A stretch of DNA of 31,427 nucleotides from Octopus sinensis (taxonomy: Eukaryota): the NCBI RefSeq assembly GCF_006345805.1, contig NW_021832372.1:1-31427 (forward strand). The letters run 5' to 3'. The position numbers were made by a program, and so were the translations under genes. The notes under the pieces were generated by a model that made no database searches, was not told the DNA's origin, and was given only the letters and a program-made list of their open reading frames with translations. Shown one piece after another: positions 7,427 to 9,030 of this stretch. The stretch's first letter is position 1, and every line of letters starts with the position of its first letter.

Positions 7427-7776
7427 AATGTTAGGGGTCATGTGATCAAAATATTTTTTCAACCATCTATTCCAGTGTTACTAGAGCCACATACGGCCTT
7501 CAATTGCATACAGTGCCTTAACAGGGCTTAACAATTACCCCCAGGACTCCATGTCGGCGGCAGAGTTAAGTCTAAGGCCTTGTGGAAAGGAGTAAGGAAG
7601 CATCACAGGTCCTTCGTTGTTAATAACCCTAAAACTATGACAGTAGCATGAAATTTTGTATCCATAACACTTGGAACTTCAGAAGGGTTTGCACATAACT
7701 ATCTGTTACATCTTCTGTTAACTTTTTGATCTTAGTCGAAGTATTTCTCGTTTGAGAAAAACCAAATCAAATCTTT
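7427..7776 (-). pseudogene. Tc1/mariner-superfamily transposase fossil, catalytic-domain part (maT/DD37D-like)
   Basis: Minus-strand translation KDLIWFFSNEKYFD*DQKVNRRCNR*LCANPSEVPSVMDTKFHATVIVLG / NEGPVMLPYSFPQGLRLNS ... DHMTPNIW. This is a decayed WFFSDEK..QDQKVN motif with stops and frameshifts. Confidence 0.85.
7764..7776 (+). repeat. Left copy of 13-bp target-site duplication AAATCAAATCTTT
   Basis: Exact direct repeat at 9018-9030; flanking bases differ on both sides. Confidence 0.9.
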
Positions 7777-7836
7777 ATTTACGTTATTTACATTATTTAA
7801 ATTCCACGGATATTTGACCTCATCTTGTTTGTTGTT

Positions 7837-7882
7837 AACACAACGTTTCGGCTGATATACCCTCGAGACTACTTAGGGTGTC
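7837..7882 (-). pseudogene. Inactivated hammerhead ribozyme (left arm)
   Basis: Reverse complement gacac-cctaagt-a-gtctc-gagggtatat-cagcc-gaaac-gtt-gtgtt; the CUGAUGA core and stem II 5' strand are mutated. Confidence 0.7.
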
Positions 7883-7931
7883 TTGAGGAAATTTCGAACC
7901 TTGGTTCTCATTCCCAAAGTATTTTCCGATG

Positions 7932-7932
7932 C

Positions 7933-7983
<51 letters not shown>

Positions 7984-7991
7984 TACTATTA

Positions 7992-8051
<60 letters not shown>

Positions 8052-8184
8052 TACTATTATTATTATTATTATTATTATCATCATCATCATTATCATCATC
8101 ATCATCACCATCACCATCATCACCACCATCACCCCCATCACCACCATCACCACCATCACCACCATTATCATCATCACCACCATC

Positions 8185-8240
<56 letters not shown>

Positions 8241-8253
8241 CATCTTCATCTTC

Positions 8254-8327
<74 letters not shown>

Positions 8328-8339
8328 CATTATTATTAA

Positions 8340-8390
<51 letters not shown>

Positions 8391-8408
8391 CATTATTATA
8401 TTATTATT

Positions 8409-8454
<46 letters not shown>

Positions 8455-8498
8455 TACTAATATTATTATTATTATTATTACTTTCTATTATTATTATT
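7932..8498. repeat. (TTA)n/(TCA)n/(CCA)n expanded spacer of the left arm
   Basis: Direct; its mirror is the shorter (TAA)n tract at 8628-8830. Confidence 0.95.
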
Positions 8499-8569
8499 CA
8501 GTCACTGCTTGGAATCGAACTCGGAATTTGGGTGTTAGTAGTCCACGCTCTTACCCACTACGCAATACG
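8499..8569 (-). promoter_or_regulatory. tRNA-like Pol III head (A box 8555-8565, B box 8511-8522)
   Basis: Minus strand reads ttgcgtagtgg (A-box-like) and gagttcgattcc (B box) with tRNA-like spacing. Confidence 0.65.
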
Positions 8570-8577
8570 CCCACAGC

Positions 8578-8627
8578 CATATGACGTAGTGGTTAAGCGC
8601 GGGCTTCTAACTCCAAGATTCCGAGTT
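8578..8627 (+). promoter_or_regulatory. tRNA-like Pol III head with truncated B box
   Basis: tgacgtagtggttaag (A-box-like, 8582-8592); the B box is cut after gagtt by a deletion relative to the left arm. Confidence 0.55.
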
Positions 8628-8684
8628 GAACAATAATAATAATAGTAATGATATAAATAATAATAATAATAATAATCATAATAA

Positions 8685-8724
<40 letters not shown>

Positions 8725-8771
8725 GATATAATAATAATATAATAATAATAATAATAATAATATAATAATAA

Positions 8772-8826
<55 letters not shown>

Positions 8827-8881
8827 TAATTACATCGGAAAATACCTTAGGAATGAGAACCCAGATTCGAAATTTCCCCAA

Positions 8882-8927
8882 GACACCTGATGAAGGCTGG
8901 AGGGTATATCAACCGAAACGTTGTGTT
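8882..8927 (+). ncRNA. Minimal type I hammerhead ribozyme motif (Penelope-type, palindromic stem III)
   Basis: Stem I GACAC/GTGTT; core CTGATGA 8887-8893 plus an extra A; stem II GGCTG/CAACC (one C-A mismatch) with a 10-nt loop; GAAAC 8915-8919; GTT triplet 8920-8922. Confidence 0.75.
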
Positions 8928-9017
8928 AACAACAAACAAGATGAGGACAAATATCCGTCAATTATAAATAATGTAAATGATGTACATAATTCCTCATCTC
9001 TTAAATATAGAACTGTA

Positions 9018-9030
9018 AAATCAAATCTTT
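9018..9030 (+). repeat. Right copy of 13-bp target-site duplication AAATCAAATCTTT
   Basis: Exact direct repeat of 7764-7776. Confidence 0.9.

What the first reader, a model, noticed from the sequence alone, without database searches (positions are those of the whole stretch)
7764..9030. A 1.24-kb palindromic tRNA-head + hammerhead element inserted as one unit (13-bp TSD)
Seen: two head-to-head arms (tRNA-like head, trinucleotide spacer, Penelope-type end) about an axis near 8572, with AAATCAAATCTTT duplicated exactly at both outer edges. The left arm lacks about 30 terminal nt present on the right. Established: Penelope-like elements (PLEs) carry hammerheads in their terminal repeats and often have an inverted, truncated 5' repeat. 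Inference: the palindrome was generated in a single insertion and is a SINE-like, non-coding parasite of PLE machinery. I know of no named family with this full architecture, but I cannot search to confirm.
Basis: partly seen in the sequence, partly recalled or inferred. Interest (0 to 1): 0.88.

Follow-up and report, generated by a model that had tools for sequence, protein, structure and literature searches.

The report
Inverted-dimer hammerhead retroelement insertion
A 1.24-kb non-coding mobile element, made of two mirror-image copies that each carry a tRNA-gene-like promoter, a simple repeat and a small self-cutting-RNA motif, was inserted in one event into a dead transposon gene, and its layout matches the known insertion signature of Penelope-like retroelements.

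Summary
The 13-mer AAATCAAATCTTT occurs only at 7764 and 9018. Between the copies lie two head-to-head arms about an axis at 8573/8574. Each arm has a head, an (AAT)n tract and a ~160-nt tail (tails 87-89% identical). The right arm has 28 extra terminal nt.

New evidence: the flanks are two halves of a decayed Tc1/mariner-type transposase gene on the minus strand. Removing 7777-9017 plus exactly one 13-mer restores a frame (…KRLLDKMRNPPEKDLIWFFSNEKYFD…) collinear with intact homologues. So the block is one insertion and the 13-mer is a true target-site duplication.

The right tail has the only minimal hammerhead in the window (8882-8927; 0/300 shuffles). The left copy's core is destroyed. The left head has the only A+B box pair in the window (0/100 shuffles). 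ARAGORN and Rfam call neither a tRNA nor a hammerhead.

An inverted head-to-head repeat, a one-sided ~30-nt extension and a TSD around the whole unit are published hallmarks of Penelope-like element (PLE) integration. The palindrome is therefore not new. A tRNA-like head joined to a PLE-type tail is the possibly new part.

I found no other copy and no autonomous PLE partner, so "SINE family" is unproven. Interest is moderate.

The parts
7764..7776 (.). Left copy of the 13-bp target-site duplication AAATCAAATCTTT. On the minus strand it encodes K-D-L-I of the interrupted transposase pseudogene.
7777..7938 (-). Left-arm tail, the mirror copy of 8829-8989. It directly abuts the TSD, with a 2-nt overlap (TT/AA) between the arm similarity and the TSD.
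7837..7882 (-). Degenerate hammerhead remnant. It keeps GACAC…CAGCC-GAAA-CG-UU-GUGUU, but the CUGAUGA box reads CCUAAGU. Six of the 18 tail mismatches fall in these 12 columns.
7939..8490 (-). Left-arm compound microsatellite. It reads (ATT)n-(ATC)n-(ACC/ATC)n-(ATT)n on the plus strand, which is (AAT)n-type on the element's sense strand. It is 552 bp against 196 bp on the right.
8491..8572 (-). Left-arm head with pol III type-2 promoter boxes. The A box TTGCGTAGTGG is at 8555-8565 and the B box AGTTCGATTCC at 8511-8521. This is the only A+B pair in the window.
   Evidence: no tRNA call in 3, 27, 28
8573..8574 (.). Symmetry axis: 2 nt (AC) between the inferred position 1 of the two heads. Each A box starts 7 nt inside its arm.
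   Evidence: by direct reading; for the A-box positions
8575..8632 (+). Right-arm head. The A box TGACGTAGTGG is at 8582-8592. The B-box region is truncated (GAGTTGAAC) next to the microsatellite.
8633..8828 (+). Right-arm (AAT)n microsatellite. It starts with the same AATAATAATAATAG as the left arm, so the tract predates the two arms.
8829..8989 (+). Right-arm tail, the part that is mirrored on the left.
8882..8927 (+). Minimal type I hammerhead: helix I GACAC/GUGUU, CUGAUGA, an extra A, helix II GGCUG…CAACC (one C·A mismatch), GAAA, C15.2-G16.2, U16.1, U17. The predicted cleavage site is between 8922 and 8923.
   Evidence: 1 hit; 0/300 shuffles; the MFE fold reproduces helices I and II but z=+0.55; no Rfam hammerhead hit
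8990..9017 (+). 28-nt terminal extension present on the right arm only. It has no counterpart elsewhere in the element.
   Evidence: compare the 30-40-bp / 31-bp one-sided 'tail' of PLE insertions
9018..9030 (.). Right copy of the 13-bp target-site duplication.
9031..9348 (-). Host of the insertion: the N-terminal part (HTH region, MADLQLTRETKRHAVI… to …NPPEKDLI) of a decayed Tc1/mariner-type transposase pseudogene.
7354..7763 (-). Host of the insertion: continuation of the same pseudogene (WFFSNEKYFD*DQKVNRRCNR*LCANPSEVPSVMDTKFHATVIVLG…), with several stops.

Best explanation
The block 7777-9017 is one retrotransposition product that landed in a dead Tc1/mariner-type transposase gene.

The mobile unit is a non-coding composite RNA. 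It has a ~75-nt head with pol III A and B boxes (tRNA-gene-like), an internal (AAT)n tract, and a ~165-190-nt tail with a minimal type I hammerhead of the kind found in the terminal repeats of Penelope-like elements (PLEs).

The most likely route is as follows. A PLE reverse transcriptase/GIY-YIG endonuclease, supplied in trans, nicked the two target strands 13 bp apart. cDNA was made from the tail end of the RNA up to its 5' end. A second, inverted copy was made in the same event. That copy came either from priming at the second nick on a second RNA molecule or from snap-back self-priming of the first cDNA. Either way the two copies meet head to head at the RNA 5' ends.

The left copy started, or was joined, 28 nt inside the RNA 3' end at a 2-nt microhomology. 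This leaves the one-sided 28-nt extension.

Since insertion the arms have decayed: the left hammerhead core is lost, the right B box is truncated, and the microsatellites have grown unequally.

Shown: the single insertion, the 13-bp TSD, the hammerhead motif, the A/B boxes and the geometry. Inferred: the PLE machinery, pol III transcription and the way the second arm was made.
For: (1) Empty site.
- The window ORF 9172-9399(-) has 89 homologues at E<=1e-3. They include XP_025161066.1 from an ant and a pseudoscorpion protein named 'Transposase'.
- The joined-flank peptide aligns with P0014 (E=4e-27) and P0024 (E=1e-29). P0014, and P0066 in the alignment, cross the junction PPEKDLI|WFFSNEK without a gap; P0024 has an 8-aa gap there, caused by its own internal WFFSD duplication.
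- The frame survives with one TSD copy only, not with two or none.

(2) The 13-mer is unique to the two edges.

(3) There is one minimal hammerhead in 31 kb and none in 300 shuffles. [quoted passage not shown] All are listed as marks of PLE min-HHRs in PMC4209133. That paper also reports paired min-HHRs on opposite strands 100-700 bp apart.

(4) PLE insertions typically carry an inverted copy head to head, an optional 30-40-bp (31-bp) extension on one end only, and a TSD around the whole unit. Their pLTRs can move captured foreign sequence in trans (PMC8557442; PMC3846280).

(5) The window has a single A+B box pair and shuffles give 0/100. Both A boxes sit 7 nt from the axis. Neither arm's sense strand has a T>=4 run, and both run into T5 in the flank.

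(6) Both arms share the same head/microsatellite junction AATAATAATAATAG. The composite therefore existed before the two arms.
Against: - No second copy of head or tail exists in the window. None was found in metagenome, viral or prokaryote contig scans or in protein-word searches of both tail frames. These collections hardly cover animal genomes, so this says little, but it leaves 'family' untested.
- No autonomous PLE with this tail could be examined.
- ARAGORN and Rfam call no tRNA and no hammerhead.
- The hammerhead fold is no more stable than shuffles (z=+0.55).
- The arms differ by 11-13% in the tails and 20% in the heads, yet the TSD is perfect. If the arms were identical at birth, 13/13 has a probability of only about 0.16.
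- Six of the 18 tail mismatches cluster in the hammerhead core. That is not what independent point decay predicts.
- The extension is 28 nt, just under the published 30-40 nt.
Confidence: 0.6

Rival explanations
1. One-off chimera, not a SINE family. A PLE reverse transcriptase began on a solo pLTR-type RNA. It then switched template onto the (AAT)n 3' tail of an ordinary tRNA-derived SINE transcript and copied it to its 5' end. Snap-back of this single chimeric cDNA made the palindrome.
For: - No other copy was found anywhere I could search.
- In this window other SINE-like repeats adjoin pure trinucleotide tracts: one ends in an (ATT)n tract on its own strand, and another follows one. A head plus a trinucleotide tract could therefore be a complete SINE.
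- Template jumps at trinucleotide repeats and capture of foreign sequence next to pLTRs are described for PLEs.
- Snap-back explains why both arms share the same junction details.
Against: - Snap-back makes identical arms, so all 11-20% divergence must be later decay while the TSD stayed 13/13.
- The clustered differences in the hammerhead core fit two different templates better.
- The A/B boxes, the hammerhead and the lack of T>=4 runs all lie on one strand, as expected for a single transcription unit.
Confidence: 0.2
2. An ordinary LINE-dependent tRNA-SINE, inserted as an inverted dimer by twin priming. The hammerhead-like motif would be part of a LINE-type or retrozyme-type tail, with no PLE involved.
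For: - The head has pol III boxes.
- TSDs of 10-20 bp are usual for LINE-mediated events (from general knowledge).
- No PLE partner was shown.
Against: - Twin priming on one RNA gives an inverted internal segment, not two full copies that both reach the RNA 5' end.
- The one-sided ~30-nt extension and head-to-head full repeats are PLE traits.
- Minimal hammerheads without helix III are reported from PLEs and Terminons.
- There is no poly(A) or simple-repeat 3' end.
Confidence: 0.1
3. Two independent or nested insertions that happen to lie head to head.
For: The arms differ by 11-20% and in length. The heads align poorly.
Against: - Only the outer edges carry a duplication. Neither arm has its own TSD at the axis.
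- The flanks join into one reading frame only when the whole block and one 13-mer are removed.
- The two heads meet within 2 nt of their inferred first bases.
Confidence: 0.05
4. A foldback or MITE-type DNA transposon with ~160-bp terminal inverted repeats, moved by cut and paste.
For: Long inverted repeats near both ends and a flanking direct repeat.
Against: - The inverted repeat does not reach the right terminus. The 28 nt at 8990-9017 are unmatched.
- A 13-bp TSD fits no DNA-transposon superfamily I know (from memory, 2-11 bp).
- The repeat carries a strand-specific ribozyme motif, and the centre carries strand-specific pol III boxes pointing outward.
Confidence: 0.05

Closest known systems
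Penelope-like element (PLE) insertion units: pLTRs with an inverted head-to-head copy and a one-sided 'tail' (Arkhipova et al. 2013, PMC3846280; Craig et al. 2021, PMC8557442)
   Same: - Inverted repeat flanking the unit, joined head to head.
- TSD around the whole unit (8-10 bp in Adineta vaga, 13 bp here).
- An extra ~30 nt on one end only.
- A minimal hammerhead in the repeat.
- Ability of such repeats to carry foreign sequence in trans.
   Different: - No RT-GIY-YIG ORF and no direct pLTR pair.
- The interior is a pair of pol III-box heads plus microsatellites.
- Similarity of the tail to any real pLTR is untested.
PLE minimal hammerheads (min-HHR; Cervera & de la Peña 2014, PMC4209133)
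   Same: - CUGAUGA…GAAA core and no helix III loop, with ACGU able to pair only in a dimer.
- An unpaired nucleotide before helix II, the G10.1-C11.1 pair and a 5-bp helix I.
- Occurrence as paired motifs on opposite strands.
   Different: - Helix II is 5 bp with one mismatch, against the 7-8 bp typical of the schistosome set.
- The second copy is dead.
- Cleavage activity is untested.
SMalpha / Sjalpha SINE-like elements of schistosomes (Ferbeyre et al. 1998, as cited in PMC8490949)
   Same: Short non-coding retroposon that combines a hammerhead with SINE-like organisation. The pol III promoter of SMalpha is from my memory of the 1998 paper.
   Different: - SMalpha carries a canonical type I hammerhead that Rfam-type models recognise, and it is ~335 bp without an internal microsatellite.
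Metazoan non-LTR retrozymes (de la Peña et al. 2020, PMC7229834; Li et al. 2026 preprint 10.64898/2026.07.22.740005)
   Same: Non-coding, hammerhead-bearing, thought to depend on PLE enzymes, with TSDs longer than 4 bp.
   Different: Retrozymes are direct tandem repeats of 170-400 nt with full type I hammerheads and make circular RNA. This element is an inverted dimer with a minimal hammerhead and a pol III-type head.
tRNA-derived SINEs (SINE2)
   Same: A and B boxes at tRNA spacing at the 5' end, a composite head/body/tail layout, no ORF, and a TSD.
   Different: - No tRNA model or ARAGORN hit.
- The partner would be a PLE rather than a LINE.
- The simple repeat is internal, not at the 3' end.
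- Family status is unknown.

Membership tests
PLE-type insertion / non-autonomous PLE derivative | Hammerhead (minimal type I) in the terminal repeat | tested here: met
   Descriptor hit at 8882-8927(+), the only one in the window, 0/300 shuffles. The mirror copy at 7837-7882 has a destroyed core.
PLE-type insertion / non-autonomous PLE derivative | Inverted copy joined head to head, giving inverted repeats around the unit | tested here: met
   Arms 7775-7938 and 8826-8989. Heads meet at 8572 and 8575.
PLE-type insertion / non-autonomous PLE derivative | Optional 30-40-bp extension on one end only | tested here: met
   28 nt at 8990-9017 on the right only. This is slightly shorter than the published 30-40 / 31 / 34-37 bp.
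PLE-type insertion / non-autonomous PLE derivative | Target-site duplication around the whole unit | tested here: met
   13-bp TSD, proven by the transposase-frame empty site.
PLE-type insertion / non-autonomous PLE derivative | Terminal sequence shared with an autonomous RT-GIY-YIG element of the same genome | not testable with these tools
   There is no animal genome collection to search. No other copy of the tail exists in the window. No RT or GIY-YIG ORF was seen among the window ORFs (by eye only).
tRNA-derived SINE (SINE2) | Internal pol III promoter: A and B boxes at tRNA-like spacing | tested here: met
   Left head: TTGCGTAGTGG and AGTTCGATTCC, one mismatch each. This is the only pair in the window, 0/100 shuffles. 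The right head has the A box only.
tRNA-derived SINE (SINE2) | Recognisable tRNA-related sequence or structure | tested here: not met
   ARAGORN finds none, even at 85% thresholds. Rfam gives no tRNA hit at E<=10 on a 156-nt slice. A resemblance to Arg/Asn-type tRNAs is from memory only.
tRNA-derived SINE (SINE2) | Multi-copy dispersed family, each copy with its own TSD | not testable with these tools
   Zero hits, but none of those collections covers the host genome.
Metazoan non-LTR retrozyme | Direct tandem repeats, each with a full type I hammerhead | tested here: not met
   The arms are inverted, not tandem. No Rfam hammerhead family matches.
MITE / foldback DNA transposon | Inverted repeats that reach both termini, with a fixed short TSD | tested here: not met
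   28 unmatched nt lie at the right terminus. A 13-bp TSD is outside the known ranges (from memory).

The most novel reading that the evidence does not exclude
This could be one copy of a real family of pol III-transcribed, tRNA-headed SINEs whose 3' module is a PLE terminal repeat with a minimal hammerhead. Such SINEs would be copied by PLE RT/GIY-YIG enzymes rather than by LINEs.

They would habitually integrate as full-length head-to-head dimers. Because the RNA is short and has a defined pol III 5' end, the copies would record how PLEs build their inverted repeats: two complete cDNAs meeting exactly at the RNA 5' ends.
Probability: 0.35. Interest if true: 0.65.

Novelty: new variant of a known kind. 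Interest (0 to 1): 0.5.

Why it matters
PLEs are the least understood class of retrotransposons. There is no in vitro system for their integration, and the origin of their tandem and inverted repeats is an open question (PMC8557442).

A short non-coding passenger with a fixed 5' end gives a clean readout of that mechanism. It shows where priming starts, where the two copies join and how far apart the nicks are.

If it is a family, it would add a PLE-dependent branch to the SINE world. It would also help explain the thousands of dispersed minimal hammerheads in animal genomes. If it is a single chimera, it is a tidy but ordinary example of known PLE behaviour.

Tried and rejected
- Rfam at gathering thresholds on the whole window, then at E<=10 on 1.6-kb, 156-nt and 91-nt slices. 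No tRNA or hammerhead family was found, only chance snoRNA, CRISPR and miRNA-hairpin matches caused by repeats and the palindrome.
- ARAGORN at default and relaxed thresholds. Nothing credible was found.
- Exact-pattern scans for conserved tail blocks in metagenome contigs (2 scans), viral contigs and prokaryote genome contigs. All gave zero hits.
- Protein-word searches with the sense and antisense translations of the tail, hoping to catch ORFs called on other copies. No candidates were found.
- Pfam, PDB and the word-indexed protein search with the joined-flank peptide. None recognised the decayed transposase. The stop-free N-terminal ORF worked.
- Exact look-up of two window ORFs to identify the host record. 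Neither is on record, so the host remains unidentified. Other SINE-like repeats in the window remind me of octopus, but this is from memory only.
- Weak head-like matches at 10215-10290 and 30340-30400. They share only generic box motifs.
- An assembly artefact was rejected. The arms differ in sequence and length, and both flanks continue one gene.
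Full report
WHAT IS THERE

The region reads, left to right on the plus strand:
- the 13-mer AAATCAAATCTTT (7764-7776);
- a 162-nt unique segment (7777-7938);
- a 552-bp compound trinucleotide tract (ATT, then ATC/ACC, then ATT; 7939-8490);
- an 82-nt unique segment (8491-8572);
- two bases (8573-8574);
- a 58-nt unique segment (8575-8632);
- a 196-bp (AAT)n tract (8633-8828);
- a 189-nt unique segment (8829-9017);
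- the same 13-mer (9018-9030).

The repeat finder reports the 13-mer pair and an inverted repeat 7775-7938 / 8826-8989, 164 nt at 86%. blastn gives 157 nt at 87% for the outer segments and 45 nt at 80% for the inner ones. A global alignment of the outer segments gives 88.6% identity, with 8 transitions and 10 transversions. TRF places the tracts at 7935-8498 and 8632-8830. The right outer segment runs 28 nt further (8990-9017) than the left one, which abuts the 13-mer directly.

IS THE 13-MER A REAL TARGET-SITE DUPLICATION?

The 13-mer occurs only at these two places in the window. A shared 13-mer between the two 81-nt boundary windows arose in 0.04% of shuffles. It arose in 2% of random real window pairs, but those cases come from shared microsatellites, and this 13-mer is not a microsatellite.

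A stronger test came from the flanks. On the minus strand the right flank holds an ORF beginning MADLQLTRETKRHAVILVIKAQHSDLEISQFLKIARSFVYNVWKK. Joining 7776 to 9031 gives a continuous frame …RSKRLLDKMRNPPEKDLIWFFSNEKYFD*DQKVNRRCNR*LCANPSEVPSVMDTKFHATVIVLG….

Pfam, PDB and the word-indexed protein search did not recognise this decayed sequence. A full HMMER scan of 1.84 billion representatives with the stop-free N-terminal ORF (9172-9399, minus strand) found 89 proteins at E<=1e-3. The longer ones continue as:
- P0014: …IRGKRLLDKLKHPEVPNILWFFSDAKNFDQEKINRRNDR…
- P0066: …KAKRLLNKFKHPEEPGMIWFFSDEKSF…
- P0024: …NQKVNPRNDRWLSRDPGGVLTVMHTKLPVTVMVLGVVGN.

P0014 is an ant protein, XP_025161066.1. P0083 is a pseudoscorpion protein that its source names 'Transposase'. 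P0083 and P0032 end in …QQDSAPSHTA…, which from memory is the second-aspartate region of Tc1/mariner enzymes.

BLASTP of the joined-flank peptide gives E=4e-27 against P0014 and 1e-29 against P0024. The P0014 alignment runs straight through the junction with no gap. The same holds for P0066 in a multiple alignment. P0024 shows an 8-aa gap at the junction, caused by an internal duplication of its own WFFSD segment.

Thirteen is not a multiple of three. Keeping one 13-mer preserves the frame and the homology. Keeping two or none destroys both. So 7777-9017 is an insertion into a dead transposase gene, and the 13-mer is a duplication made by that insertion. This is the equivalent of an empty-site test, done with paralogues.

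ONE EVENT OR SEVERAL?

Only the outer edges carry a duplication. At the axis neither arm is flanked by a repeat of its other end. A second element inserted exactly at the 5' end of the first, in opposite orientation and without its own TSD, is possible but contrived.

Both arms begin their microsatellite with the same AATAATAATAATAG next to the head. So the head-repeat-tail order existed before the two arms diverged. I take the block as a single integration product. Later nested events are not needed to explain anything.

An assembly artefact is excluded for two reasons. The arms differ in sequence and length, and both flanks continue one gene.

THE TAIL CARRIES A MINIMAL HAMMERHEAD

Rfam finds no hammerhead at any threshold I tried. 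This is expected for motifs without helix III.

I wrote a descriptor after Cervera and de la Peña (PMC4209133). It requires helix I of at least 4 bp, CUGANGA, an optional extra base, helix II closed by G10.1-C11.1, GAAA, a pairing 15.2-16.2, U16.1 and a non-G at 17. It finds one hit in the whole window on both strands, 8882-8927(+): GACAC CUGAUGA A GGCUGGAGGGUAUAUCAACC GAAA CG U U GUGUU. It finds none in 300 dinucleotide shuffles.

The hit has the features that paper lists as not imposed by the search:
- the extra nucleotide before helix II;
- the G10.1-C11.1 pair;
- the palindromic C-G at 15.2-16.2, so that ACGU can form helix III only between two molecules;
- a 5-bp helix I.

Helix II has one C·A mismatch. 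The left arm has G at that position (CAGCC), so the family consensus probably pairs fully. The MFE fold reproduces helices I and II but is no more stable than shuffles (z=+0.55). This fits the weak, dimer-dependent activity reported for such motifs, but it is not evidence in itself.

The left-arm copy (7837-7882, minus strand) keeps helix I, the 3' strand of helix II and GAAACGUU, but it reads CCUAAGU where CUGAUGA should be. Six of the 18 tail mismatches fall in these 12 columns.

THE HEADS

On the minus strand the left head has TTGCGTAGTGG and, 33 nt downstream, AGTTCGATTCC. Each is one mismatch from the pol III A-box (TRGCNNAGTGG) and B-box (GGTTCGANNCC) consensus. This is the only such pair in the window, and none occurred in 100 shuffles.

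The right head has an A box (TGACGTAGTGG, 8582-8592). Its B-box region is cut short next to the microsatellite. Counting the A box as starting at tRNA position 8, the two heads begin at 8572 (minus strand) and 8575 (plus strand), 2 nt apart.

The boxes and the hammerhead point the same way in each arm. Neither arm's sense strand has a run of four or more T, and each runs into T5 in the flank. The absence of T runs in the non-repeat parts is not significant on its own.

ARAGORN and the Rfam tRNA model do not call a tRNA. 'tRNA-like' therefore means promoter boxes, not a cloverleaf. A resemblance of the anticodon-arm region to Arg/Asn-type tRNAs is from my memory and was not tested.

COMPARISON WITH WHAT IS KNOWN

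PLE insertions are described as often having an inverted 5'-truncated copy next to the 5' end, which forms inverted repeats around the unit. [quoted passage not shown]

In Adineta vaga, a typical insert is 'completed' by an inverted pLTR and flanked by a 9-bp TSD. [quoted passage not shown] Head-to-head is the most frequent inverted arrangement. pLTRs alone sufficed to move an intron-containing host gene and other unrelated sequences in trans, with 8-bp TSDs (PMC3846280). D. virilis Penelope has a 34-37-bp repeat at the 3' end (PMC2377424).

Minimal hammerheads lie in the pLTRs. They are also scattered by the thousand in animal genomes, sometimes as pairs on opposite strands 100-700 bp apart (PMC4209133; PMC7761336).

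The present block has all of these: head-to-head inverted copies, a one-sided 28-nt extension, a TSD around the whole unit, and a minimal hammerhead in the repeat. The palindromic layout is thus the known PLE signature, not a new architecture.

Hammerhead-bearing SINE-like elements are also known (SMalpha of schistosomes, as cited in PMC8490949). Non-LTR retrozymes are argued to be non-autonomous PLE derivatives (PMC7229834; preprint 10.64898/2026.07.22.740005).

What I did not find in the open literature searched is a tRNA-box head fused to a PLE-type minimal-hammerhead tail. That is an absence in a limited library, not proof of novelty. Repbase and Dfam could not be consulted.

MECHANISM

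The best reading is target-primed reverse transcription by a PLE enzyme supplied in trans. The 13-bp TSD gives the stagger between the two nicks.

The right arm is a cDNA of the whole RNA, from its 3' end (9017) to its 5' end (8575). The left arm is a second complete copy in the opposite orientation. It was either primed from the other nick on a second RNA molecule, or made by snap-back of the first cDNA.

The left arm's similarity to the right arm ends in …ATAA, whose last two bases overlap the TT of the TSD. This suggests priming or joining at a 2-nt microhomology 28 nt inside the RNA 3' end, and it would explain the one-sided extension.

Both heads reach the inferred first base. This fits a template with a defined 5' end, as a pol III transcript would have.

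I cannot tell the two-template model from snap-back:
- Two templates fit the 11-20% divergence and the clustered core differences with a perfect TSD.
- Snap-back fits the shared junction details, but it then needs an old insertion. The chance of 13/13 at 13% divergence is about 0.16.

LIMITS

I could not census the host genome. Exact-pattern scans of metagenome, viral and prokaryote contigs and protein-word searches with both tail frames found nothing. These collections hardly contain animal DNA. Two window ORFs are not on record in the assembly index, so the host is unidentified.

Three points are therefore untested:
- whether this is a family or a one-off chimera;
- whether single-arm copies outnumber palindromic ones;
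- whether an autonomous PLE shares the tail.

VERDICT

PLE-type integration of a non-coding passenger is the best explanation (about 0.6). The 'SINE family' and 'no known architecture' parts are unproven and overstated respectively.

It is a new variant of a known kind and of moderate interest. It would be more interesting if a genome-wide search shows a family of such head-tail composites.

Noticed in passing
window 7354-7776 and 9031-9348, minus strand: A decayed Tc1/mariner-type transposase pseudogene (HTH N-terminus, WFFSNEK…NRRCNR…VIVLG motif region, several stops) hosts the insertion. Its homologues include an ant protein (XP_025161066.1) and a pseudoscorpion 'Transposase'. Pfam does not recognise its catalytic part.
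   Followed up: yes
window 7837-7882 versus 8882-8927: Differences between the two arms are concentrated in the hammerhead core and the 5' strand of helix II: 6 of 18 tail mismatches lie in 12 columns. This is unlike scattered point decay. It may mean two different source copies or one complex mutation.
   Followed up: partly
window 24893-26196: A roughly 620-670-bp unit is repeated in tandem. 25279-25578 and 25897-26196 are 100% identical over 300 nt (spacing 618). 24893-25138 and 25562-25807 are 91% identical (spacing 669).
   Followed up: partly
window 31101-31244, plus strand: An open frame reads …QHPRYSPDIAPSDYHSFRSLQNSLNGKKF. From memory this looks like the C-terminal third-aspartate region of a mariner transposase, so it may be a second, unrelated DNA-transposon remnant at the window edge.
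   Followed up: no
window ~2990-3200, 3860-4020, 6240-6400, 6720-7050: There are several diverged copies (73-79%) of another SINE-like repeat. One copy ends in an (ATT)n tract (3201-3294) and another follows one (3805-3850). From memory it resembles an abundant octopus SINE, which would make the host a cephalopod. This was not tested.
   Followed up: partly
window 30340-30480, plus strand: Another short element has a perfect-looking B-box region (GAGTTCGATTCCCGG), followed by (TGTGT)n and a unique tail. It shares a 12-nt string ATGACGTAGTG with the right head, probably by chance.
   Followed up: partly
whole window: Microsatellite density is extreme: 88 TRF rows in 31 kb, with di-, tri- and tetranucleotide tracts every few hundred bases. 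No convincing host protein-coding exon was seen among the ORFs.
   Followed up: no
window 8519-8626: The palindromic centre gives weak Rfam matches to plant and animal miRNA-precursor families (best E=0.031, far below the gathering score). These reflect the hairpin potential of the head-to-head junction, not a miRNA gene.
   Followed up: yes
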